DNA from: Podarcis cretensis
Taxonomy: Eukaryota
Direction: 5' to 3'
Assembly: GCA_951804945.1 (NCBI GenBank)
Contig: OX638163.1
Coordinates: 36,208,001 to 36,272,000 of the forward strand
Length of the DNA stretch: 64,000 bases
Part shown: positions 2-59,292 of the stretch, piece after piece
Layout of the letters: every line of letters begins with the position of its first letter
How positions within the stretch are numbered: the stretch's first letter is position 1
The notes under the pieces: model-generated
Seen by the model: only the letters and a program-made list of their open reading frames with translations
Database searches by the model: none
Told to the model about the DNA's origin: nothing
Made by a program: the position numbers and the translations under genes

Positions 2-2484
2 AGCACACCTGCAGCCACCCTGTCAGACCTGCTGGAGGTGGTGGCAGGCTGGGCCTTGGAGTTCCCAAGCCTACTGGTTTTGGGAGACTTCAACGTCCAT
101 GCCGATGCCGCTCCCTCCTCACAGGCTCTGGACCTAGTGACTTCCATGGCAACACTAGGGCTCTCTCAGGTTGTTTTGGGCCCCACTCATCAAGCAGGCC
201 ACACGCTGGATCTGATCTTTGGGGCTGGCATAGATGTGATCATGCTCCCTGCTGTGGAAGTGCCATGGTCTGATCACTACGCTCTGAAAGCCAAGATTGA
301 CTTCCCGCTCCTCCCCGGCTCGGGTGGCGAACCTATTTGGGCTCGTCCGCAAAAACTGATGGATCCTGATAGATTCCAACGAGCCTTGTGGAACCCTGCT
401 CCTCCTGGCGACTCATTAGATGACCTTGTTGAGGACTGGAATAACCGGCTCTTGGCAGCCATTGATGAGATCGCGCCTAAGCGCCCTCTGCGACCCCGTC
501 GAAACCAGGCCCCTTGGTTTACTGTGGAGCTCCGGAAAATGAAGTGGGATCTCAGACGGCTAGAGCCAGTATGGCGACGGACTTGTGACGGAGCCTCAAG
601 AACATCTTATAGGACGCTTATGAAAGCCTATGAGATGGCTATGAAAGCTGCTAAGAACTCTTACTTTGCAGTTTCCATTGCATCCACTAGCTCTCGCCCG
701 GCACAACTTTTTAGAATAATTAGGTCAATAACGTCCTTAGGAGGACAACCAAATTTAAGCATAAATTCGACCCACAGCTGTGAGGCATTTGCGAGTTTTT
801 TTGCGGAGAAAGTCCTATTGCTCCGCCGTGACCTCCCTGCCAATTTAGATACAGTGACTGAACTGAAGGCCCCTCGACTGACTTCAGGTCCAGTGTTGGA
901 CCATTTCGATCGGATACTCCCTACTGATGTGGATAGATTCTTCCAAGTTGGTAGGCCCACCACCTGCCTCCTTGATCCGTGCCCGTCTTGGCTGATTAGG
1001 GAGTGTCCAGATGTTGCGCGGACCCCCCTGGTTGAAATTATCAATTTGTCCCTTGACACGGGGACATTCCCAGGGGAACTGAAGGAAGCAGTGGTGTGTC
1101 CACTCTTAAAAAAAAACTTCATTAGATCCCTTAGACCTATCCAATTACCGCCCAGTTTCAAATCTTCCATACCTGGGTAAGGTAATTGAGAGAGCGGTTG
1201 CTGAACAGCTTGGTAGGTTTCTGGAGGAAACATCGGCATTAGATCCATTTCAGTCCGGTTTCCGTCCTGGTTTTGGGACGGAGACGGCTCTGGTTGCCCT
1301 AACAGATGATCTCCGTAGACAACTGGATCAAGGTGGGTCAGGACTGCTGATCCTTTTAGATTTGTCAGCAGCCTTTGACATGGTTGATCATGATCTTCTG
1401 AACCACCGCCTCACAGACGTGGGGATACAGGGCATAGCCCGTAACTGGTTGTGCTCTTTTATCTCTGGTCGGGGACAGAGGGTGGCACTAGGGAGGGAAA
1501 TGTCGTCGCGCCACTCCTTGGTGTGTGGAGTGCCGCAGGGCGCAATTCTCTCCCTGATGCTTTTTAACATCTTTATGCGCCCCCTTGCCCAGATTATCTG
1601 GAGCTTTGGGCTGGGCTGTCACCAATATGCTGATGACACTCAGCTCTATCTGCTGATGGATGGCCACACCGACTCGACCCCGAACACACTGACCAGATGC
1701 TTGGAAGCTGTGGCTGGATGGTTTTGTGGGAGCCGATTGAAACTAAATCCTTCGAAGACAGAGGTCCTATGGCTAGGTCGGGATGGCATGGGGATGAGGG
1801 ACCAACTCCCTTCTCTTGCGGGGGGCCCAATTAGTGCCATTGCCTTCCGTTAAGAGTTTGGGTGTAATCCTTGACACCTCCCTTTCCATGGAGGCACAGG
1901 TTACAGCAACAGCCAAGGCGACATTTTTCTATCTTCGCCGCATCAAGCAGTTGGTCCCTTACCTTTCCCGCCCTGACTTGAACACAGTGATCCATGCGAC
2001 GGTCATCTCCAGGCTTGACTACTGTAGTTCGCTCTACGTGGGGCTGCCCTTGAAGCTGTCCCAGAAACTCCAGCGGGTACAGAATGCTGCAGCAAGGCTC
2101 CTCACGGGGTCTCTGCCATGGGAGCATATTCACCCAGTGCTTTTCAAGCTGCACTGGCTCCCGGTGGAGTACAGGGTCAGATTTAAGGTGCTGCTTTTGA
2201 CCTTTAAAGCCCTTCACGGCCTAGGACCCTCGTACCTACAGGACCGCCTCTCCTGGTATGCCCCATGGAGAGCCTCAAGGTCCATAAATAACAACACCCT
2301 AGTGGTCTCAGGCCCTAAGGAAGTTAGATTGGCTTCAACCAGAGCCAGGGCCTTTTCAACTCTGGCTCCGGCCTGGTGGAACGCTCTGCCTCATGAGACC
2401 AGGGCCCTGCAGGATCTGATTTCTTTCCGCAGGGCCTGTAAGACAGAGTTGTTCTGCCTGGCCTTTGGCTTGGAGCTAATTTGA
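2..2484 (+). pseudogene. L2 ORF2 (endonuclease-reverse transcriptase) broken only by two +1 homopolymer frameshifts
   Basis: ORFs 38..1180, 1362..1853 and 1816..2484 join into one frame if one A is removed from A9 (1108-1116) and one G from G6 (1820-1825); no in-frame stops seen. Confidence 0.9.
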
Positions 2485-8896: not shown

Positions 8897-9252
8897 AAGG
8901 GAAAGGGAAAGGGACCCCTGACCATTAGGTCCAGTCGTGACCAACTCTGGGGTTGCGGCGCTCATCTCGCTTTATTGGCCGAGGGAGCCAGCGTACAGCT
9001 TCCGGGTCATGTGACCGGCATGACTAAGCTGCTTCTAGCAAATCAGAACAGCACACGGAAATGCCGTTTACCTTCCTGCCGGAGCGGTACATATTTATCT
9101 ACTTGCACTTTGATGTGTTTTCAAACTGCTAGGTTGGCAGAAGCAGGAACCGAGCAATGGGAGCTCACCCCGTTTGTGAGGATTCGAACCGCCGACCTTC
9201 TGATCGGCAAGACCTAGGCTCTGTGGGTTAACCCACAGCGCCACCCATGTTC
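8897..9252 (-). mobile_element. Sauria SINE, full length
   Basis: Pol III A box (TGGCGCTGTGG) and B box (GGTTCGAATCC) on minus strand; 11-bp TSD CTAAACATTTA (8886-8896, 9253-9263). Confidence 0.95.
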
Positions 9253-9314
9253 CTAAACATTTACTGGGGAGTAAATCCTTTCAACAACAATGGGACATCC
9301 TTCAAGCACGGCTG

Positions 9315-10958: not shown

Positions 10959-11897
10959 CAATGACCGCTCCCCACTTAAAACGGGGGGCGCCTTTTGCGT
11001 GGACACGTGCAGCCCTGGATCTGGAGTGGCCCCATCAGCATAGGCTTTGCCTTCCCTCAGGTGGGATACCTGGAGGTCCCCGCCTACCCCAGTGAGTTGT
11101 CCAATCCCACCTGGGGGAAGTGTTGCCAGGGAAACCAGGCCAGGTAAGGGGAGGGATTACCTGCCCACACAATAGAGTGAGTTGTCCAATCCCACCTGGG
11201 GGAAGTGTTGCCAGGGAAACCAGGCCAGGTAAGGGGAGGGATTACCTGCCCACACAATAGAGGGTGGATCTTACTTGTTAATCCTCACTTGGCTCCAGAG
11301 CTTCTCCCACCCTACCCACCCTCAGTTAATGTCTTCTTTTGCAGGTTAACTTTTCTTCATAGGTTTTGCAGGTTAACCTCTCCACAGGTATGCGGGCGCT
11401 GCTACGATAAGGTCGCTGTTAAAGGGCCGGAAAGGAATTTCCCTGCATTGGCAGGTTTCGCCTTTCCCGTAGCAAAACGTCACAACTTTGGCGGTATCAG
11501 GCCTTGGGCGGAATCCTTTAGTCCATCTTCCTCTTTGCGGCGGCGATACCAGGGTTCCCCGTTAAAGGGGTTTTTGAAGGGAGGCTTTGGCCGTACGCCG
11601 AAAGGTCGTCATTGCTCTCCCCTGCGGCGGCGTAACGGGGGCGGCTATCTCTGCTTGAACATATGTTCTCCAGAGCCGGCCCATCCCCTCCACACACACT
11701 GGATAACCCTGATGCTCCCTAGGTCCCCGGCTGGGGACTAGGGAGGGAGAACGCCCAATGCCTGAGCCAAGGTCTACCCACATTTGAAATTTAATAAAGT
11801 TGTGGCCAATTTAATCCCATAGCACGTTGTCTAGAGTCGTTATTCCACATGACGGGGGGGACCACTCGGGATCTGGGGACTCCGCCTGTCCACGCAA
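10959..11897 (+). mobile_element. Solo A-B terminal-repeat unit of an Ngaro-type tyrosine-recombinase retrotransposon
   Basis: GGTCGCTG..GGAATTT..TTCGCCT..CGTAGCAAAACGTCACAACTT..GCGGTAT matches the reverse complement of A2 (35892-36000); AATAAAGTTGTGGCC and terminal CCACGCAA match B; inserted into L2 at a CAA core without TSD. Confidence 0.8.
11091..11260. repeat. Perfect 2 x 85-bp tandem duplication inside the Ngaro A repeat
   Basis: 11091-11175 is identical to 11176-11260. Confidence 0.95.
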
Positions 11898-30858: not shown

Positions 30859-31226
30859 AAGGTAAAGGTACCCCTGCCCGTACGGGCCAGTCGTGTCCGA
30901 CTCTGGGGTTGCGTGCTCATCTCGCTTAAGAGGCCGGGAGCCAGCGCTGTCCGCAGACACTTCTGGGTCACGTGGCCAGTGTGACGAAGCTGCTCTGGCG
31001 AGCCAGCACCAGCACCAGCGCAGCGCACGGAAACGCCGTTACCTTCCCACTAGGTAAGCGGTACCTATTTATCTACTTGCACTTAGGGGTGCTTTCGAAC
31101 TGCTAGGTGGGCAGGAGCTGGGACCAAACGATGGGAGCTCACCCCGCCGCGGGGATTCGAACTGCCGACCATACGATTGGGAAGTCCTAGGCACTGAGGT
31201 TTTACCCACAGCGCCACCCGCGTCCC
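30859..31226 (-). mobile_element. Sauria SINE, full length, inserted at the MITE terminus
   Basis: A/B boxes and tail present; 8-bp TSD TGACTGTA (30851-30858, 31227-31234). Confidence 0.95.
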
Positions 31227-32600
31227 TGACTGTAGACTTCTATAAAAATAACAAACCTTTGTCAACACAAGAAATACAAGACAAACTAGAAGACACCCAA
31301 ATTCCCTGGTTAGCACAACACCAATTACATGCCCTCTTAAACAATCCAGCAGTAAAATCAGCAGCAACTAGGCCCCTGACAACCTTTAAAAACCATCTCC
31401 TAACAACAAAGGGACCCAGTAAAGGGATGGTATCCGCAGTATACAAAATACTACTCCAAAATCCCACAAACCCCCTAGATGCAATCAAAATACAATGGGA
31501 GGATGACACAGGCTATGAGATTAACCCCACTCAATGGACCAGAATGTGGTCTAACCCCCCCCCCTTTAAATCCATATCAACAAAAGGAAAAGAACTCACT
31601 CTGAAACTCACCTACAGGTGGTACCTAACACCAAGAAAACTAGTTCTAATATGACCAGGAACCTCACCAAAATGCTGGAGAGGGTGCACCTCCACAGGCA
31701 CATACCTCCACATGTTGTGGGAATGCCCCAAAATCCAACTATTCTGGACAACAACCATATGAGAAATATGTAAAATAACCAAGCAAGTATTAGAAATCAC
31801 TGCAGAATTGGCCTTACTCAATAACTTCCCAGACAATAATGTCCACTTGCACCACAAATAACTCATAATCCACCTACTTTCAGCACCCAGAAGCATCATA
31901 ACCAGACACTGGAGAGACCTGTCAGGAGTAAGCATGGACCAATGGTACCAAATAGTATGGGAAACAGCCTTACTAGAAAAATTAACCAATAAACTGAAAC
32001 TGACACGGGAACAATTAGAGGAAGACACCTTCACCCCTGTATGGCTCCCCTTTATCACATACACAGCCCAACAAGACAATGACAAAAATCCACCAACAGC
32101 ATACAAATCAATATGGCTAACCTGAAATTAATAAGATTTTGGAACGCATAAATAAAGTAATCAAACTGTCAAATCTAGCATATTTATCTATATCAATTTG
32201 TGCACTCCCACTTCCACATGTCTCCAGAGTAACAATTAAAAAACTAGAAAACTCAATCTCAAGGGTTTCAATTCTAGAAACTATGTGAAGCACAGCTGGC
32301 ACCCAGAGTATTCCCTCATACACCTATTTTAGACCACCCAAAGCTCCACTATACAGACAAGTACAGGCAATATAAACAATGGGAAAGAGCAGGAATATTC
32401 AGGATAAAGATCATTCTCCCAATTGCTGAGAAAAATGTTAATTGAAATATTCCTAATTTGTTTCTTAATTTGATCCAAATATGCCATATTTGTTTGTTTG
32501 CTCATTCACTTATTTGCAAAAATGAAGGCATTCAACCCCTAATGATGTTTGAAGTTTGGAAATTAGATCTCCTTGCAAAACCCTAATTAAACATTTAAAA

Positions 32601-35245: not shown

Positions 35246-35509
35246 GTGAAAAAGTGATATTTCCACACACCCATCCCTTGTCAAATGCAGGGTGAATCTT
35301 TGAAGCTCAGCATAGTCATTGTGGTCATATAGAAAAGTTTTCTGGGCTTTACATAATCCCTGCAACCTTTGCCTACAAGGGGTTGAAAGATCAATTTATT
35401 TCCTGAGTATTTCACTGTTGCATATTCTCAGTCATAAATTAATCTCTTCCCATTCTCTGCCACTGTGCAAGCTTACACACACAGGGGGTTGTGGCGCTCA
35501 TCTCGTTTT

Positions 35510-35891
35510 GCGTGGCAAGTACCCTCCCCCATGAGAAATGAAGACACTGGACACATTATTTAAGGTTAATGGGCATAAAAAGCCATAACTTTATTGATTA
35601 CAGAATTGAAAGGTATTGGCCTTAGGCATTGGCTCCTACCGTCTACCCGGCATGGTGACCGGGATGGGTTGTCCACAAGCCATGGGAGACCTGTTGAAGT
35701 ACGCCAACTAGGATCCCACGGGTGTCACCGCTCGGGGGCGTGCCGGAGGCCCTTACCTCCCTAGGTTTCGGACAAGGCCACGCCCCCCGGAGTCCTTTAC
35801 CAGACTACCCTTTCCATTGGGGAAGGTGATGGCGCTTCCTTCCCCCCATTCATTTGCATAACAATAAACCCCTGCCAATGCCTAACCGCCA
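35510..35891 (-). repeat. Ngaro repeat B2 (3' terminal)
   Basis: Direct repeat of 36268-36650 (about 9 mismatches by eye); carries AATAAA on minus strand. Confidence 0.95.
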
Positions 35892-36267
35892 ATACCGCGG
35901 AAGTTGTGACGTTTGCTACGAGGTAGGCGAAAAAACCAAAAGGCTTGAAGTGTGCCAACTTGGAAAAATTCCTACCAGGCCCCTTGCGGCGACCAACCGA
36001 AGTCCATAGCAAGGTCATACCTAGCTAAACCTAAAGGGTGGGTGGAATGGGAAAACCGCTCAGCTGGGAAAGGGAAAAGAGGGCGGTCCCGGGGCATGCC
36101 TGGCCTTAAATGGGCTAGGCCCCGCCTCCCCGGTCCACCAATTGGCGGATGGGGTGGAAGGCACGCCCGGGGATTCCCTGACCACGCAGGGGTAAGACTC
36201 CGCCCCCGCGTGTGTGGGTGGAGGGTTTTGCCCGCAACCCCCTCTCCTCTCAGGCAGAAATGGCTTT
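35892..36267 (-). repeat. Ngaro repeat A2 (complete copy of A)
   Basis: Its segment ~36113-36267 repeats 37645-37799. Confidence 0.92.
36100..36150 (-). promoter_or_regulatory. Putative Pol II promoter in Ngaro A repeat: CCAAT box, GC box, TATA-like CATTTAAGG
   Basis: Minus strand GCCAATTGG..GGGAGGCGGGG..CATTTAAGG; same order in the 50-kb copy (GCCAATTGG..GGGGCGGG..CACTTAAGG). Confidence 0.55.
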
Positions 36268-36650
36268 GCGTGGCAAGTAACCTCCCCCATGAGAAATGAA
36301 GACACTGGACACATTATTTAAGGTTAATGGGCATAAAAAGGCCACAACTTTATTGATTACAGAATTGAAAGGTATTGGCCTTAGGCATTGGCTCCTACCG
36401 TCTACCCGGCATGGTGACCGGGATGGGTTGTCCACAAGCCGTGGGAGACCTGTTGAAGTACGCCAACTAGGATCCCACGGGTGTCACCGCTCGGGGGCGT
36501 GCTGGAGGCCCTTACCTCCCTAGGTTTCGGACAAGGCCATGCCCCCCGGAGTCCTTTACTGGACTACCCTTTCCATTGGGGAAGGTGATGGCGCTTCCTT
36601 CCTCCCATTCATTTGCATAACAATAAACCCCTGCCAATGCCTAACCGCCA
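36268..36650 (-). repeat. Ngaro repeat B1
   Basis: Direct repeat of 35510-35891. Confidence 0.95.
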
Positions 36651-36677
36651 CTCGAGCAAAGCTCGCCGCCAGTACCT

Positions 36678-37241
36678 TCAAACCTGTAACCAATCCCTAA
36701 TTCCTGCTATGATGTCCCCCAGCCAAATATCATTTCCAGCATCTGACAGATGCACGCCATCCCATCTGTAGAGGGCCTCGTTGCTGTACTGGATGCTCGG
36801 GTGGCCAATGATGCACCCACCCAGAGCCGCCACTCTACGTTCCACAGCCCGCTGCAAGACCTTTCTTGCTTTATTGATTCCAACCGGGCTCAAACAATCC
36901 CTCCATGTCCTTCTCTCGAGCAACGAGGACCATAGTATAGTAATGTTTGGGTAAACTGCCGTCAGATCAGCCAGGTCGTCAAAGATGTTCCATCTCAAGT
37001 CAATAGCTTTACGGTATGCAAGATCATTTTCTCCCAACTGGATAAGCAAGGCATCCGGGGGGCCCTCGCGGGCGGCCCTTGCCAACACAGCTGGCTTGAA
37101 TTCGCTCCAGCGCATCCCTCTTCGTGCTATCCACACCAGCTCGACATTGGCAGGTAAATTCAAATTCTGCCCCAACCCGGTCGTCATTGCACAATTCTTG
37201 GCCCAATGCACAATGCTGTGGCCCACCAACCAAATGCGCAC
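36678..37241 (-). CDS. SGNH/GDSL-family hydrolase (esterase/lipase-like) of the Ngaro element, intact frame
   Basis: Block I WLVGHSIV (Ser), block II ARRG (Gly), block III IQLGENDL (Asn), block V DGVH (Asp/His); 187 codons; starts at GTG, so the true start is uncertain. Confidence 0.88.
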   Translation of the reverse strand: MRIWLVGHSIVHWAKNCAMTTGLGQNLNLPANVELVWIARRGMRWSEFKPAVLARAAREGPPDALLIQLGENDLAYRKAIDLRWNIFDDLADLTAVYPNITILWSSLLERRTWRDCLSPVGINKARKVLQRAVERRVAALGGCIIGHPSIQYSNEALYRWDGVHLSDAGNDIWLGDIIAGIRDWLQV

Positions 37242-37299
37242 CCTCTTGCACTCCGAAAAGCAAATAGACAGAAAAAACCGGGTAAGGGTACCACACCAG

Positions 37300-37644
37300 T
37301 CATAAATTCTTTCTCACGTAAGCCCTGTAGGCATTAGATTTCCACCGCCCCAGGTCCTTTATCCTCTCTGCGGAGAGCCCCAGGTGGACAGCTGTGGTGG
37401 CGGCCCCAATCCGAAAGGAGTGAGCCGCAAATTCAGCCGCGGGCAGACTGCAGGCTGTCAAAGCCAGGCGCATCACCCTTGTAAACTGGTGTCTAGCCAA
37501 CAGTGATCTATCCGCGTGATTAAAAAGGGTGCCTGGGCTACAGGGCCTTAAGTATAGGAAACGCCTTGTATCCCTCACCGGGCAGGGCCCACTACCTTGT
37601 GCAGCTGGTAACCGTATGAGAGCCCCCTTACCCCGTTGGTCCAT
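37300..37644 (-). pseudogene. Tyrosine recombinase C-terminal half, 5'-truncated by the internal deletion
   Basis: DQRGKG, CPV, HSFRIGAAT (H-x-x-R), LGRWKSNAYRAY (Trp and catalytic Tyr); N-terminal catalytic Arg/Lys missing. Confidence 0.92.
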
Positions 37645-37799
37645 GGCTAGGCCCTGCCTCCGTGGTCCGCCGATTGGTGGACGGGGTGGAAGGCATGCCC
37701 GGGGATTCCCTGACCACGCGGGGGCAAGACCCCGCCCCCGCGTGTGTGGGTGGAGGGTTTTGCCCGCAACCCCCTCTCCTCTCAGGCGGAAATGGCTTT
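37645..37799 (-). repeat. Ngaro repeat A1 (5' terminal, truncated)
   Basis: About 12 mismatches by eye to the corresponding part of A2, many at CpG. Confidence 0.92.
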
Positions 37800-38077
37800 A
37801 CCGGCCAAGGGAGCTGGTGTACAGCTTCTGGGTCATGTGGCCAGCATGACTAAGCCGCTTCTGGCGAACCAGAGCAGTGCAAGGAAATGCCGTTTACCTT
37901 CCTGCCAGAGCGGTACCAGTTTATCTATTCGCACTTGACAAGCTTCCGAACTGCTACGTTGGCAGGAGCAGGGACCGAGCAATGGGAGCTCACCCCGTCG
38001 TGGGGATTTGAACCGCCGACCTTCTGATCGGCAAGCCCTGGTCTCTGTGATTTAACCCACATTGCCACCCGCGTCCC
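37800..38077 (-). mobile_element. Sauria SINE 5' part; its continuation lies at 35485-35509 across the Ngaro insertion
   Basis: GGGGTTGTGGCGCTCATCTCGTTTT + ACCGGCCAAGGGAGC rebuilds the sequence seen intact at ~8949-8990. Confidence 0.93.
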
Positions 38078-40149
38078 TTTTTTGTACATATTCCCACCTA
38101 AAATTTGTGTTCACATTGCATGCATTTATTCTAAAAGGTTAAGAACAAAGGATAACTGCATTCTGACCTGGAAATACAAAGCAAGCCATTTTGCTTTTAA
38201 AAATATGGCCAAAGTAAAGTCATCCAGGATTCTTAGAATTAGCTGGTATCTTTCATTTCCACCTCTACCATTCCTTCACCTGTAACCTAGATGCTCTTTG
38301 TTGTTGTTGTTCTGTTTTGTTCTGGCTCTTGTTTCATTCCTATCCCCTTTAAGAACATCTTTGCTTCTCAGCTGGAGAAGTTTATTTATGACTTGTTTAA
38401 TGGCTTCTATGAAGGGCACGCCATGCACTCGCCCACCACAAAATGCATTTATTCAGTTCCATAGATTCACCATTTGCTTTTAAATAGCTTAATGAACACA
38501 CCTGAAATATTCATAATGAAATGCAGGATCCTGGAGCTATAACAACTTTTGGTTCCTGAAGAGTGTGTAGCTTTTCTATTAAAATGTATTAAGTTACTGT
38601 TAATGCATTTATGGGGGCATTATGCTGGGTGGCAATGATTATAGTCATAATTCTGGGAGGCTGACAAAGAACCCCAGACTAAGTCATTACTAGAAAGTTT
38701 TTATAAGATCACTGAATATAGCAGACCTTAGAAATGATGTGAAACTTCACTGTAGGCTAGACTGTATGTGTAGACAAGGCTTCAGAACTCAGGTCAATCC
38801 ATATTTTGTTTGTTTAAAATAATTTGGTTTTACAATTTGATAGTGTTTTGCAATGTGCCTTACACGTTACTCAAAAACAGTTTTATCTTAAAGTAACTGG
38901 GTAACCAAGACTTCCCATTAAACAAATCTTAGTTGATTAATGGGGATCAATTAATAGATTAAGGTTGCAATCATATACACCTTTTTTTTCAGCCCCAGGG
39001 CCATATTCCATTCAGGCACATGCAAGTGGTGGGCATAGCTAGAGGCAAGAGTGAGTGGTACAATTAATACAAATTTTACCTCTGTGAATAGACTAGTTTA
39101 TATCCACATTCACATACAGCCCTTAGTCCTCCACCTAGGCAAACAAGAGGCAATTCAAGGATACACTCCAGCTAACAAAACCAATTCAGGTGTGAAGCAG
39201 GGCCAATGAAGTGTGTTGCCTGGACGTATGTGGCATGGTCTAGGGGAGAGAACTAGTGGTCCACATTTGGCCCTAGAGCCTGTGGCTTTCTATTCCTGCC
39301 ATACACAACTATTTGGGAATATATCCAGTTGATCTCAATGGGGCTTACATCTGGATAGACATGGAGAATATGGTTCTGTAAATCAGATTAGTGAATTAAA
39401 ACCCTTTTTGTAGGGCTGCACTGCAACTCTGCAGGAAAGGGTGTAATCCTAACGTAATGTGAAATGATTTTGTTACTTGATGCAATTTTTGTATATGCCT
39501 TCAATTTTAAAAATGATGTTACTTCATATACTGGCATCAAAGGCATAAGTTTAGATACAATGTATTATATTGTCTTTCTCATGTTCACCCATGGTTCTCC
39601 AGATTTGTTGCTTCATTAACAAAATTACTAATCCCCACAAACTGATGCCAATGTTTAGTGCTAGTTTAGTGCCGTTTTGTGCTGCCCCCCCCCCCAACTG
39701 AGTAATTGAAACTCTAACTTGGGTCATAATTAAATGTCCAGAAACCCAACCTGATCCAATTGACTCCAAATGAGTGTCAAAATGGTGTGCTGGTTTTGTG
39801 TCATTTTGTGATGCAAACCACACTTTCTGAGCAGCCCCTAAAACTGAGTAATTGAAGTCAAACCAGGGGCAATAGGTACACCCCAAAACCAAACCTTGTC
39901 ACACGCAAACCTGGGTCACAAGTAAATGGCCTAAACCCCCAAATGGGGATTGCGGCACAAAGCAACACCAAACCAGCACAATACTTTGGCACTGAACTGC
40001 AGTTAATCAGACAAGGTTTTGGGGGTTTTTTTTGCTCAGAGATCTCAACATCTCTCTCTCAATGTCTCAGAGATCAATTAAAAGTGGTGAAGAGATCAGA
40101 ACTCCACCTCCTGCCCTTTCTGGGAACAGAAACAATTTGGAGTATTGCT

Positions 40150-41707: not shown

Positions 41708-43345
41708 AGGAACACAGGAAGCTGCCTTATTCTGAGTCAGACTATTGGTCCATCTAGCTAGGAAGTGATATTCCAGCTGAACTATTTAAAATTTTAAAAG
41801 ATGATGCTGTTAAGGTGCTACACTCAATAGGCCAGCAAGTTTGGAAAACTCAGCTGTGGCCAGAGGATTGGAGAAAACAGTCTACATCCCAATCCCAAAG
41901 AAGGGAAGTGCCAAAGAATGCTCCAACTACCGCACACTTGTGCTCATTTCACATGCTAGGAAGGTTATGCTTAAAATTCTGCAAGGCAGGCTTAAGCAGT
42001 ATGTGGACCGAGAACTCCCAGAAGTGCAAGCTGGATTTCAAAGGGGCAGAGGAACTAGAGACCAAATTGCAAACATGCTCTGGATTGTGGATAAAGCTAG
42101 AGAGTTCCAGAAAAACATCTACTTCTGCTTCATTGACTACGCAAAAGCATTTGACTGTGTTGACCACAGCAAACTATGGCAAGTTCTTAAAGAAATGGGA
42201 GTGCCTGATCACCTCATCTGTCTCCTGAGAAATCTCTATGTGGGACAAGAAGCTACAGTTAGAACTGGATATGGAACAACTGATTGGTTCAAAATTGGGA
42301 AAGGCTGTATATTGTCTCCCTGCTTATTTAACTTATATGCAGAATTCATCATGCAAAAGGCTGGACTGGGTGAATCCCAAGCCGGAATTAAGATTGCCAG
42401 GAGAAATATCAACAACCTCAGATATGCAGATGAACAATCTTAATGGCAGAAAGTGAGGAGGAATTAAAGAACCTTTTAATGAGGGTAAAAGAGGAGAGTG
42501 CAAAATATGGTCTAAAACTCAACATCAAAAAAACTAAGATCATGGCCACTGATCCCATCACCTCCTAGCAAATAGAATGGGAAGAAATGGAGGCAGTGAG
42601 AGATTTTACTTTCTTGGGTTCCATGATCACTGCAGATGGTGACAGCAGTCATGAAATTAAAAGATGCCTGCTTCTTGGGAGAAAAGCAATGACAAACCTA
42701 GACAGCATCTTTAAAAGCAGAGACATCACCTTGCCGACAAAGGTCCGTATAGTTAAAGCTATGTTTTTCCCAGTAGTGATGTATGGAAGTGAGAGCTGGA
42801 CCATAAAGAAGGCTGATCGCCGAAGAATTGATGCTTTTGAATTATGGTGCTGGAAGAGACTCTTGAGAGTCCTGTGGATTGCGAGAAGATCAAACCTCTC
42901 CATTCTGAAGGAAATCAGCCCTGAGTGCTCATTGGAAGGACAGATCCTGAAGCTGAGGCTCCAATACTTTGGCCACCTCATGAGAAGAGAAGACTCCCTG
43001 GGAAAGACCCTGATGCTGGGAAAGATTGAGGGCACAAGGAGAAGCGGTCGAAAGAGGATGAGATGTTTGGATAGTGTTTTCGAGGTTACCAGCATGAGTC
43101 TGACCAAGCTGCGGGGGGCAGTGGAGGACAGGAGTGCCTGGCGTGCTCTGGTCCATGGGGTCACAAAGAGTCAGACACGACTAAACAACTAAGCAACTAC
43201 AACAAGCTTAGTAGTGTCTAAGCTGACTTTCCACGATTTTCAGACAGGGGATACTTTCCCAGGCCTCCCAGGAAATGTAAGAATTGAAACTGGACCCTGC
43301 TACATGCAAAGCAGCTTCTACCCCTTCACAATGGCCCATCCCCTA
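41708..43345 (-). mobile_element. Older tRNA-derived SINE split by the BovB insertion (pieces 41708-41759 and 43205-43345)
   Basis: AGGAAGCTGCCTTATTCTGAGTCAGACTATTGGTCCATCTAGCT resumes as AGCTTAGTAGTGTCTA; tail also seen at ~27820-27890. Confidence 0.65.
41760..43204 (+). mobile_element. BovB (RTE) LINE, 5'-truncated, with RT pseudogene
   Basis: IPIPKKGSAKECSNYRT, QAGFQRGRGTRDQI, FIDYAKAFD, LSPCLFNLY, NLRYAD, YGSESWT, ALVHGVTKSQTRLN, (CAA)-like tail. Confidence 0.96.
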
Positions 43346-49744: not shown

Positions 49745-50211
49745 TGAGTGTGGACAATGTCCTAGCAACTCACTCAAAAGATCTATTAAAGCCAAACTCT
49801 CATTTATCAAAAGATTTCTTCCGACCCTACATATTCTTTTGAGTATTTTTTCTTTTTTCATGCTGATAATGAAGAGAGAAAAGTGAAAGTCACAATGTGG
49901 GTTTTGCCTTGTAGGAGCACTGCATCCCTGGACAGCTTCTAACACTGACTATGCCTGCCTTAGGACGTCTTTTTCTGGCACTCCAATGAATTATGGGTGG
50001 CTTACAGCTACCCTTTAAATATTCTGCATTACTCCAGAGTATGTCCTGGTCAATCATCACTCTGATACATTGTGAATATCTTCAAGGACAGCACCAAAGC
50101 TGTTCAGTACATATTGGTGTACTCTATTGCTCCTTGCTGTCATCAACACCCACTAAGTCCTGCGGGACTCATGGATTCCCTTGACAAAGGAAGAAGGCAC
50201 TTGAAGGCATT

Positions 50212-50519
50212 GTGTGGCTATTCCCTCCCCCCCACAGGTGGAATAAATGAAGACAACGGACACAGAGTTTTAGGTTAATGGGCGAAAAATGGCCACAACT
50301 GCGTCGTCTCCAGGGAAGAAAGGGGGTGAGCCAGGGGCTGCCCTGACCTTAAGTGGCCATAGGAAGGCCCGCCCCTGCCGCCAGCCAATTGGCTGGCGCC
50401 ACAGGGTATGCTAATTGGGTGAATCCCTGTCTCCTGCGAGGCTGACGCCAGCCTCGCAGAGTGTGGGCGGGGTCGTGATCCCACAACCCCCCCTCCTCCT
50501 GAAGGTCGGAAGGGGCATT
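50212..50519 (-). mobile_element. Ngaro-derived mini-element (5' end of A joined to 3' end of B)
   Basis: GTGTGGC..CCTCCCCC..AAATGAAGACA..GGTTAATGGGC..GGCCACAACT matches the B terminus; CCCACAACCCC..TCCTCCT..GGAA..GGCATT matches the A terminus; GGCATT at both junctions (50206-50211, 50514-50519). Confidence 0.8.
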
Positions 50520-54472: not shown

Positions 54473-54835
54473 CTGTGGATTAAACCACAGAACCTAGGGC
54501 TTGCCGATTAGAAGGTCGGCGGTTCAAATCCCCACGACGGGGTGAGCTCCCGTTGCTTGGTCCCAGCTCCTGCCTACCTAGCAGTTCAAAAGCACGTCAA
54601 GTGCAAGTAGATAAATAGGTACTGCTCTGGTGGGAAGGTAAACAGCGTTTCCGTGTGCTGCTCTGGTTTGCCAGAAGTGGCTTAGTCATGGTGGCCACAT
54701 GACCCGGAAGCGGTCTGCAGACAAACGCCAGCTCCCTCAGCCTATAGAGCGAGATGAGCGTGCAACCCCAGAGTCATTTGTGACTGGACCTAATGGTCAG
54801 GGGTCCGTTTACCTTTACTTTGACCTTTACCTTTA
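54473..54835 (+). mobile_element. Sauria SINE, near full length, adjoining an L2 3' remnant (~54355-54466)
   Basis: B box GGTTCAAATCC, core, (ACCTTT)n tail. Confidence 0.93.
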
Positions 54836-58923: not shown

Positions 58924-59292
58924 AAAGGTAAAGGTAAAGGTACCCCTGCCCGTACGGGCCAGTCTTGACAGACTCTGGGGTTGTGCGCCCATCTCAATTA
59001 AGAGGCCAGGGGCCAGCGCTGTCTGGAGACACTTCCGGGTCACGTGGCCAGTGTGACAAAGCTGCATCTGGCGAGCCAGAGCTGCACACGGAAACGCCGT
59101 TTACCTTCCCGCTGGTAAGCGGTCCCTATTTATCTACTTGCACCCGGAGGTGCTTTCGAACTGCTAGGTTGGCAGGCGCTGGGACCGAGCAGCGGGAGCG
59201 CACCCCGCCGCAGGGATTCGAACCGCCGACCTTTCAATCGGCAAGTCCTAGGTGCTGAGGCTTTAACCCACAGCGCCACCTGCGTCCCCTGC
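58924..59292 (-). mobile_element. Sauria SINE, full length
   Basis: A/B boxes and tail; 12-bp TSD GTCTGCACAGTA (58912-58923, 59293-59304). Confidence 0.95.

What the first reader, a model, noticed from the sequence alone, without database searches (positions are those of the whole stretch)
36228..36276. Structurally conserved hairpin formed only across the Ngaro end-to-start (circle) junction
Seen, sense strand, 3' end joined to 5' start. (a) Here, at the native B1|A2 join: TTGCCACGCAA-AGCCATTTCT-G-CCT-gag-AGG-AGAGGGGG-TTGCGGGCAA. (b) Solo unit, 11887-11897 joined to 10962-11005: TGTCCACGCAA-TGAC-CGCTCCCC-acttaaaac-GGGGGGCG-CCTT-TTGCGTGGACA, with an 11-bp perfect outer stem. (c) Mini-element: CCACACAA-TG-CCCCTTCC-GA-CCT-tc-AGG-A-GGAGGGGGGG-TTGTGGG. 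The sequences differ but pairing is kept, G-T wobbles favour the sense strand, and the crossover AA lies in the left arm. Known: integron attC and CTXphi attP are folded single-strand substrates of tyrosine recombinases. Inference: Ngaro may recombine a folded ssDNA junction, or use the stem to prime or delimit reverse transcription. Integration splits the hairpin, which could make the reaction one-way. I do not know of a prior description but cannot search.
Basis: partly seen in the sequence, partly recalled or inferred. Interest (0 to 1): 0.8.

Follow-up and report, generated by a model that had tools for sequence, protein, structure and literature searches.

The report
Conserved hairpin at Ngaro circle junction
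Where the end of a Ngaro jumping gene meets its start, the DNA can fold into the same two-storey hairpin in lizard elements and in very distant invertebrate-type elements, and the joining point always sits at the same spot of the fold, so this is very likely the site its recombinase works on.

Summary
All three Ngaro units in the window fold across the B|A join. These are the deleted element at 35508-37797, the solo unit at 10962-11897 and the mini unit at 50210-50517 (z -2.3 to -6.6).

Thirteen distant Ngaro families from metagenome contigs show the same layout. Their recombinase C-termini are 36-48% identical to the lizard fragment. In each, the outer stem ends exactly at the crossover. Then come about 4 unpaired bases, an inner hairpin, 3-4 unpaired bases, and a right arm starting at about +27 to +34. 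The palindrome centre lies +12 to +16 from the crossover in 12 of 13 families.

Compensatory changes support both stems: covariation score 0.339 against 0.160 in shuffles (0 of 500 reach it). The sense strand folds slightly better, which is suggestive only.

My best reading (0.45) is that this is the recombinase's attachment site, recognised as a fold. Its geometry resembles integron attC, and the 27-33-base offset matches the "extension" of DIRS1-like ends. Rivals are plain duplex half-sites and a role in reverse transcription.

I found no prior description, but the primary Ngaro papers were not held. Earlier notes of this scan describe related features elsewhere in this genome.

The parts
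36215..36289 (-). Full two-tier hairpin across the native B1|A2 join of element (a). The crossover lies within AAA at 36265-36267.
   Evidence: Folds. 75 nt, RNA sense -37.0 kcal/mol. The outer stem ends at the join.
36266..36650 (-). B1 repeat. Its last 24 nt form the left arm.
   Evidence: 97.7% identical to B2.
35892..36265 (-). A2 repeat. The first ~27 nt form the inner hairpin and the right arm follows.
   Evidence: Its first 155 nt are 92% identical to A1.
35508..35891 (-). B2 repeat. Its end is the element's 3' terminus and carries the left arm only.
   Evidence: The empty-site joint in run X7 confirms the limit.
37645..37797 (-). A1 repeat, cut off by an internal deletion. It is the 5' terminus and carries the inner hairpin and right arm.
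   Evidence: The rebuilt B2-end + A1-start join folds with z -3.2 to -3.7.
37300..37644 (-). C-terminal fragment of the tyrosine recombinase (HSFRIGAATTA ... GRWKSNAY).
   Evidence: 73 homologues, and the catalytic-region motifs are invariant in the alignment.
36678..37241 (-). Intact SGNH/GDSL-type hydrolase ORF (187 aa), the last ORF before B1.
   Evidence: Pfam hit below the curated cut-off (E 3e-4). 22 homologues in lizards and amphibians, some named SGNH hydrolase-type esterase.
10962..11019 (+). Start of solo A-B unit (b): inner hairpin and right arm.
11872..11897 (+). End of solo unit (b): left arm. Its last 11 nt pair perfectly with 10995-11005.
   Evidence: (z -6.6 RNA, -5.5 DNA).
50462..50517 (-). 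Start of mini unit (c): inner hairpin and right arm.
50210..50236 (-). End of mini unit (c): left arm. AATGCC is shared with the 5' flank.

Best explanation
The imperfect palindrome across the B|A join is the cis-acting recombination (attachment) site of Ngaro elements, and the element's tyrosine recombinase recognises it as an intrastrand fold.

Shown:
- The outer stem (end of B paired with A from about +28) ends exactly where the element is joined to host DNA.
- It is followed by about 4 unpaired bases, a 6-9-bp inner stem with a variable loop, and 3-4 unpaired bases.
- Both stems covary.
- This geometry is kept from lizard elements to elements that are probably from a marine invertebrate.

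Inferred:
- One recombinase subunit binds the outer stem and one binds the inner stem, across the unpaired spacer.
- The outer subunit cuts the strand that runs 5'->3' from the stem into the spacer. On the sense strand that cut falls exactly after the terminal AA of B.
- Exchange of that single strand with a loosely matching target would explain three observations: there is no target duplication, both ends show the crossover at the same position, and only 1-6 bases are shared with the target.

Whether the fold forms in single-stranded DNA or as a cruciform in a double-stranded circle is open.
For: The same two-tier fold, with the crossover at the boundary between outer stem and unpaired bases, occurs in 16 families. 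The palindrome centre lies +12 to +16 from the crossover in 12 of 13 families, whereas centres in background windows scatter. For 64-nt windows the mean z is -3.6.

Covariation on 15 distant joins:
- 80% of cells are paired, against 68.8% in shuffles (0 of 500 reach it).
- 47 cells change on both sides, against 20 in shuffles (0 of 500).
- The score is 0.339, against 0.160 in shuffles and 0.02-0.11 in the slid controls.
- The pair next to the invariant TTAA shows five pair types.

Cognate arms pair better than arms from other families (-10.9 against -6.5 kcal/mol).

A covariance model built from 9 joins hits only the recombinase-sense strand. It hits every B1|A2 join and correctly predicts the A2 start in L008, L048 and L070.

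The distance between the outer arms varies (right arm starts at +27 to +34), while the two unpaired stretches stay at 3-4 nt. That is expected for a hairpin and not for phased duplex sites.

There is no target duplication and the crossover is at a single position.

Precedents from the literature: attC geometry (PMC5027507), and DIRS-1 single-stranded cDNA that is competent for integration (PMC7192593).
Against: - There is no biochemical evidence for any Ngaro recombinase.
- The sense-strand advantage is small: the z-score difference has p 0.025 with RNA parameters and 0.16 with DNA parameters, and G.T against A.C is 17:8 to 31:17.
- The first cDNA strand is antisense, and on that strand canonical cleavage geometry would not hit the B|A join.
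- In the distant families a normal duplex core (TTAA-N7-TTAA) can also be read at the join.
- L024 and eight loci whose repeat ends are unverified show no such fold.
- All distant families come from a few metagenome assemblies, so few hosts are sampled.
- A circle holding the whole element would carry two identical joins, and this model does not say how one of them is chosen.
Confidence: 0.45

Rival explanations
1. The site is an ordinary duplex recombination site. The arms are inverted recombinase-binding sites on double-stranded circular DNA and no folding is needed. The palindrome merely reflects repeated half-sites read by the same protein.
For: In the distant families all four arms carry an invariant TTAA. 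The join reads TTAA-N7-TTAA, a canonical core with a 7-bp overlap and cleavage at its left edge. Several target flanks resemble the B end. The standard DIRS model uses a double-stranded circle (PMC7192593).
Against: The lizard families have no inverted partner 6-8 bp from the crossover. Positions outside TTAA change freely but stay complementary, with up to five pair types at one pair. The distance between the outer arms varies by 7 bp or more. No 6-8-bp overlap is shared with targets, and both ends cross at one position.
Confidence: 0.2
2. The fold acts in reverse transcription or cDNA processing. It would act in the RNA at B1|A2 or in single-stranded cDNA. It could set where DNA synthesis starts and stops, so that the ends fall exactly at the join. 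Or it could hold the two ends of a linear single strand together as a self-splint for circle closure, doing the job of the DIRS-1 internal complementary region.
For: The complete fold is present once in every transcript, at B1|A2. The sense strand, which is the RNA strand, folds slightly better. For DIRS-1 the primer is unknown, a 3' hairpin has been proposed as a self-primer, the circle-junction template is essential, and the cDNA is single-stranded (PMC7192593). The 27-33-nt offset equals the 24-34-nt extension of vertebrate and Dictyostelium DIRS1-like ends (PMC3266345).
Against: There is no primer-binding complementarity to tRNA ends and none is conserved among families (reading). The element is integrated by a recombinase, so its ends are set by the crossover and not by cDNA ends. 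I could derive no simple priming scheme that yields the full A1..B1-A2-B2 order.
Confidence: 0.25
3. The fold is an RNA regulatory signal, for example one that silences a poly(A) site in B1 but not in B2, or a packaging signal. Alternatively it has no function and is a chance palindrome.
For: Only B1 is followed by the right arm, so a fold would distinguish B1 from B2. Lizard units (a) and (b) carry AATAAA 85-100 nt before the end of B.
Against: The distant families have no consistent poly(A) signal near the fold. Neither idea explains why the outer stem ends exactly at the crossover in 16 families. Chance is excluded by the position test and the covariation.
Confidence: 0.1

Closest known systems
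Integron attC site (folded bottom-strand hairpin recombined by the IntI tyrosine recombinase)
   Same: An imperfect hairpin whose structure is conserved while its sequence varies. A basal paired box, an unpaired central spacer, a second paired box and a variable terminal loop. The crossover lies in the 5' arm of the basal box, next to the spacer and after AA. Very little homology with the partner site is needed (PMC5027507).
   Different: The host element is a eukaryotic retrotransposon and its recombinase is of the DIRS/Ngaro type, not IntI. The spacer is 3-4 nt per arm rather than 5-6. No clear extrahelical bases are seen. There is no evidence that the substrate is single-stranded. The favoured strand is the coding-sense strand.
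DIRS1-like termini: inverted terminal repeats plus a right or left extension, with an internal complementary region as the circle-junction template
   Same: The circle junction is a palindrome whose centre is offset from the crossover by half an extension. Extensions are 24-34 nt in vertebrate and Dictyostelium elements (PMC3266345 Table 3), against 27-33 nt here. A short shared core is present and there is no target duplication.
   Different: The arms here are 6-28 nt, not 66-316 bp. The extension lies at the 5' end rather than usually the 3' end. The internal copy of the junction is in direct orientation (B1|A2), not complementary. Ngaro elements are described in the papers I could read as having split direct repeats only.
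CTX phage attP(+) forked hairpin used by XerC/XerD
   Same: A single strand folds to present two recombinase-binding arms around an unpaired centre, one strand is exchanged, and replication finishes the reaction. This is from my own knowledge and was not checked here.
   Different: It is a bacterial phage that uses host recombinases. No sequence or protein relation exists.
Hairpin at the 3' end of DIRS-1 mRNA, proposed to self-prime reverse transcription
   Same: A short fold in a tyrosine-recombinase retrotransposon near its terminal repeats, with a proposed role in cDNA synthesis (cited in PMC7192593).
   Different: That hairpin is 14 nt and lies at the RNA 3' end, not across the circle junction. 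Conservation across families has not been reported for it.
Canonical duplex core sites (loxP, FRT, lambda core)
   Same: In the distant families the join reads TTAA-N7-TTAA, with the crossover at the left edge of the 7 bp.
   Different: The lizard joins have no such partner. No 6-8-bp overlap is shared with targets. A second, mirror-image pair of arms lies 12-16 nt further on.

Membership tests
Ngaro (DIRS-order tyrosine-recombinase retrotransposon) | Split direct repeats in the order A1 ... B1-A2-B2 | tested here: met
   Window element: B1/B2 97.7% identical and A1/A2 92%. The same order is seen in 12 or more metagenome loci.
Ngaro (DIRS-order tyrosine-recombinase retrotransposon) | Tyrosine recombinase ORF in place of a DDE integrase | tested here: met
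   A C-terminal fragment with HSFRIGAATTA and GRWKSNAY. The N-terminal part is deleted in the window copy. Full ORFs are present in L036 and L016.
Ngaro (DIRS-order tyrosine-recombinase retrotransposon) | gag-like ORF and RT/RNase H upstream of the recombinase | tested here: not met
   They are absent from the window copy: A1 runs straight into the recombinase fragment, an internal deletion. They are present in L036 and L016: a zinc-finger ORF and RVT_1 at E 4e-16 and 1e-14. The window copy is therefore a non-autonomous derivative.
Ngaro (DIRS-order tyrosine-recombinase retrotransposon) | Integration without target-site duplication, with a short core shared by the join and the target | tested here: met
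   Shared cores are AAA in (a), CAA in (b) and AATGCC in (c). An empty site is present in run X7.
attC-type folded recombination site | Imperfect hairpin: basal box, unpaired spacer, second box, variable loop | tested here: met
   The predicted folds of 16 families have this layout. This is computational evidence only.
attC-type folded recombination site | Structure conserved while sequence varies | tested here: met
   Covariation. Lizard and distant joins are not alignable by sequence: there is no model hit in the window, and BLAST finds no match between lizard units at the join.
attC-type folded recombination site | Crossover in the 5' arm of the basal box, next to the spacer | tested here: met
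   On the sense strand, B ends at the last paired base before the 4 unpaired bases in 16 families.
attC-type folded recombination site | Recombined as a single strand, with strand selectivity, and resolved by replication | not testable with these tools
   This needs biochemistry or genetics. The only evidence here is a weak sense-strand bias.
attC-type folded recombination site | Part of an integron with an IntI integrase | tested here: not met
   The context is a eukaryotic retrotransposon in a lizard genome, with RT and a DIRS-type recombinase. It may work like attC but is not a member of that family.
DIRS1-like termini | [quoted passage not shown] | tested here: not met
   The arms are 6-28 nt, and the internal junction copy is direct, not complementary.
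DIRS1-like termini | An extension of some tens of bases between the inverted repeat and the crossover | tested here: met
   27-33 nt here, against 24-34 nt in Table 3 of PMC3266345. No DIRS1-like sequence was examined here.
Canonical duplex core site | Inverted binding elements flanking a 6-8-bp overlap that is shared with the partner site | tested here: inconclusive
   TTAA-N7-TTAA is present in the distant families and absent in the lizard units. Overlap with targets is only 1-6 nt.

The most novel reading that the evidence does not exclude
Ngaro recombinases act on a folded single strand of element DNA, with sense polarity, in the manner of integron attC. Two subunits bind the outer and inner stems, one strand is exchanged with a loosely matching double-stranded target, and replication completes the insertion. 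This would be the first structure-specific, single-strand tyrosine-recombinase reaction in eukaryotes. It would also explain how DIRS-order elements integrate almost anywhere without target duplication. The 24-34-nt extension of DIRS1-like ends would be the same device.
Probability: 0.27. Interest if true: 0.9.

Novelty: new variant of a known kind. Interest (0 to 1): 0.72.

Why it matters
How DIRS-order retrotransposons recognise their own circle junction and integrate has been open since 1985. No recombinase of this group has a defined DNA site.

This feature gives a concrete, testable candidate site. It is a conserved, covarying fold with the crossover at a fixed position, and it is shared by elements whose recombinases are only about 40% identical. 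It also links Ngaro split direct repeats to the "ITR plus extension" ends of DIRS1-like elements. It points to a structure-read site, of the kind exploited in integron-based recombination tools.

In practice the fold gives annotators a way to place Ngaro termini to the base. The covariance model did this for three loci.

Tried and rejected
I could not fetch the Podarcis, Phrynocephalus, Rhineura and Bombina loci of the hydrolase homologues, so the test across vertebrate families was not done.
- The viral-contig scan found no relative.
- Read laying listed no variants inside the hairpin. It showed only that depth is lowest at the start of A2, and it revealed an empty site. All runs were contigs, so RNA ends and expression could not be read.
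- Rfam gave no match in the element or in three distant loci, apart from one unrelated tRNA.
- I rejected the poly(A)-suppression idea as a general explanation, because signal positions are not conserved.
- I rejected a tRNA primer-binding site at the start of A, because nothing is shared among families.
- L037 was dropped: it belongs to the L061 family and its B2 is truncated.
- L024 and eight loci where a repeat end was used as a stand-in for the join show no spanning fold. Their joins are unverified, so I count them neither for nor against, apart from noting them.
- The palindrome score alone is unremarkable for the weaker families (P 0.03-0.56 against background). The evidence lies in the position and the covariation.
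- One literature search was wasted on terms that were too broad.
- Goodwin and Poulter 2004 and Poulter and Butler 2015 are not held.
- The assembly accessions of the contigs appear in no held paper.

Full report
**What is at the coordinates.** It lies in a minus-strand Ngaro-type element. The parts are:
- a partial A1 (37645-37797);
- the C-terminal 114 residues of a tyrosine recombinase (37300-37644), which A1 runs straight into;
- an intact 187-aa SGNH/GDSL-like ORF (36678-37241);
- B1 (36266-36650), A2 (35892-36265) and B2 (35508-35891).

B1 and B2 are 97.7% identical and A1 and A2 are 92% identical. The three joins share AAA. Contigs of a related lizard (run X7) join 35509 to 37803 with two other letters between. 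This is an empty site, and it confirms the element's limits and the lack of a target duplication. The solo unit (10962-11897, plus strand) and the mini unit (50517->50210, minus strand) are the only other Ngaro pieces in the window.

**Is the fold real in the window?** Yes. With 14+46 nt around the join, the RNA sense z-scores against dinucleotide shuffles are -1.6 for (a), -2.1 for (a) rebuilt from B2 end plus A1 start, -6.6 for (b) and -4.7 for (c). With 30+70 nt they are -2.3, -3.7, -6.2 and -2.7. The longer windows show that the stem goes on outward, so that 22-28 nt of the end of B pair with A from about +28. Among the three lizard units the outer stem keeps pairing through double changes at three positions (G-C to A-T at -4; G-C to T-A at -9; T-A to G-C at -10). 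The inner stems share no sequence yet pair in each unit.

**Bringing in other families.** I therefore aligned 26 recombinase C-termini and scanned metagenome contigs. Of the 80 loci returned, many carry the full A1 ... B1-A2-B2 order. L036 and L016 have a zinc-finger ORF, an RT ORF and the recombinase in that order. Their recombinase C-termini are 36-48% identical to the lizard fragment and mostly 45-65% identical to each other. The nearest RT clusters are commonest in Mollusca (a weak pointer to the host).

**The same architecture in distant families.** In 13 such families the end of B (ending in TTAA) is the left arm. The first 4 bases of A are unpaired. A 6-9-bp inner stem with a 3-5-nt loop follows, then 3-4 unpaired bases, and then a right arm complementary to the end of B. 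Examples are a 10-11-bp perfect outer stem in L016 (z -5.3) and an 8-bp one in L070.

A strand-neutral palindrome alignment puts the centre of symmetry +12 to +16 from the crossover in 12 of 13 families, the three lizard units included, while background centres scatter. The raw palindrome score alone is not exceptional for the weaker families. For 64-nt windows the mean z is -3.6.

**Covariation and specificity.** On 15 distant joins (alignment A4), 80% of cells pair against 68.8% after shuffling (0 of 500 shuffles reach it). 47 cells carry changes on both sides against 20 (0 of 500). The covariation score is 0.339 against 0.160, and 0.02-0.11 when the partners are slid by 1-3 columns. 13 of 20 pairs show compensatory change. 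The sequences are related, so these are not probabilities, but the slid controls keep relatedness.

Left arms pair better with their own right arms than with those of other families (-10.9 against -6.5 kcal/mol). A covariance model built from nine joins hit only the recombinase-sense strand. It hit every B1|A2 join. In L008, L048 and L070 it placed the join at the position where BLAST had independently put the start of A2. Weaker hits at A1 starts are expected, since A1 keeps the inner hairpin and the right arm.

**Which strand?** With fixed windows the sense strand has the lower energy in 16 of 16 families (RNA parameters) and 15 of 16 (DNA parameters). The sense strand is G-rich, though, and the shuffle-corrected difference is small: z -3.6 against -2.8, with p 0.025 for RNA and 0.16 for DNA. 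Counts of G.T against A.C oppositions are 31:17 in strand-neutral alignments (p 0.06). Inside the defined helices they are 10:3 in the distant families and 7:5 in the lizard units. Composition alone predicts 1.24:1. I call this suggestive only.

**Exceptions and limits.**
- L024 has a different fold and its join is doubtful.
- Eight loci where I used the end of a degenerate repeat as a stand-in for the join show nothing.
- L078 has a simple 11-bp stem that ends at the repeat end, with a 10-nt loop and no inner hairpin.
- The verified distant families come from a few assemblies, so few hosts are sampled.
- Read laying used contigs only. It showed that the end of B1 is shared by very many copies, while the first 80 nt of A2 have the lowest depth of the element. 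That agrees with a fast-changing sequence at the start of A.

**What it most likely is.** The recombinase must recognise something within a few tens of bases of the crossover, and this fold is the only feature conserved there. Five observations point to intrastrand pairing that is read by the recombinase:
- the exact and invariant placement of the crossover at the stem/spacer boundary;
- the fixed 3-4-nt unpaired stretches, next to a terminal loop of variable length and a variable distance between the outer arms (right arm starts at +27 to +34);
- free sequence change with retained pairing outside TTAA;
- the single crossover position at both ends of inserted copies;
- the very short homology with targets.

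The layout matches published attC geometry: R box, unpaired central spacer, L box, variable terminal structure, and a crossover after AA in the 5' arm beside the spacer, followed by replicative resolution (PMC5027507). DIRS-1 makes single-stranded cDNA that can integrate, needs its circle-junction template, and has no known primer (PMC7192593).

The 27-33-nt segment between crossover and right arm equals the 24-34-nt "extension" listed for vertebrate and Dictyostelium DIRS1-like ends (PMC3266345 Table 3). Ngaro elements may therefore carry a short, so far unremarked version of the ITR-plus-extension design.

**Rivals.**
- A plain duplex site is possible for the distant families, where the join reads TTAA-N7-TTAA. 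It fits the lizard joins, the covariation and the variable arm spacing poorly.
- A role in reverse transcription or in closing a linear single strand into a circle also predicts a fold tied to the termini, and it fits the slight sense-strand bias. I could not derive a priming scheme that yields the full repeat order.
- A poly(A)-control role lacks conserved signals.
- The folded-site model has its own difficulty. Canonical cleavage geometry fits the sense strand only, while the first cDNA strand is antisense.

**Novelty.** Searches for Ngaro together with hairpin, split direct repeats, termini or circular found no description of such a fold. The primary Ngaro papers and the 2015 review are not held, so prior mention cannot be excluded. 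Rfam has nothing. Earlier notes of this scan on other pieces of the same genome mention inverted termini with a terminal hairpin in a possible solo unit, a GCAATGA core at three junctions, and a folded 3' tail. These are leads, not support. The join of solo unit (b) does read GCAATGA.

**Handling of sequences.** The joined ends of units (b) and (c) were made only inside scripts, from the window file, for folding.

Noticed in passing
window 35509 / 37803 (run X7): Contigs of a related lizard join the two flanks of element (a) with two other letters between. This is an empty site, so the insertion is absent or polymorphic in that species.
   Followed up: partly
window 36191-36269 versus 36270-36348: In contigs of three related lizards, summed depth is lowest over the first 80 nt of A2 (150-246) and highest just next to it over the end of B1 (47,000-68,000). 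The B end is shared by very many copies, while the start of A differs among them.
   Followed up: no
window 11091-11262: An exact 87-bp tandem duplication inside the A part of solo unit (b).
   Followed up: no
window 37820-38078, 8969-9254, 30960-31227, 54474-54714, 59032-59288: Five copies (77-87% alike) of a repeat with a tRNA-like start, probably a SINE. Element (a) is inserted at the edge of one copy.
   Followed up: no
window 38-2484 (+) and 41841-42443 (+): ORFs with a reverse-transcriptase domain (RVT_1, E 7e-18 and 4e-23). The ORFs at 38-2484 lack recombinase or split repeats and look like a LINE, not a Ngaro. The second ORF was not examined further.
   Followed up: partly
L033:148-203 and L033:5143: A complete B|A join lies upstream of A1, and the B after the recombinase is followed by unrelated DNA. 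This is a permuted B-A-internal-B order or tandem copies. It is what integration through the other of two identical joins of a circle would give.
   Followed up: partly
L023:1214-1309 and L023:8049-8144: The 96 bp before A1 repeat after B2 (98% identical). This is either an unusually long duplication around the element or an insertion into a tandem repeat.
   Followed up: no
L044:1040-1097: The target supplied GTTAA just before A1, so the whole fold is kept at the 5' end of the inserted copy (model score 54.9 bits).
   Followed up: no
L044:6659-6666 and L064:6878-6885: Two elements of different families are both followed by CCTTGGAA right after B2. This could be a shared target preference or a shared host repeat.
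   Followed up: no
L078:7120-7150: A variant: an 11-bp stem ending at the repeat end, a 10-nt loop, and no inner hairpin (z -3.1).
   Followed up: partly
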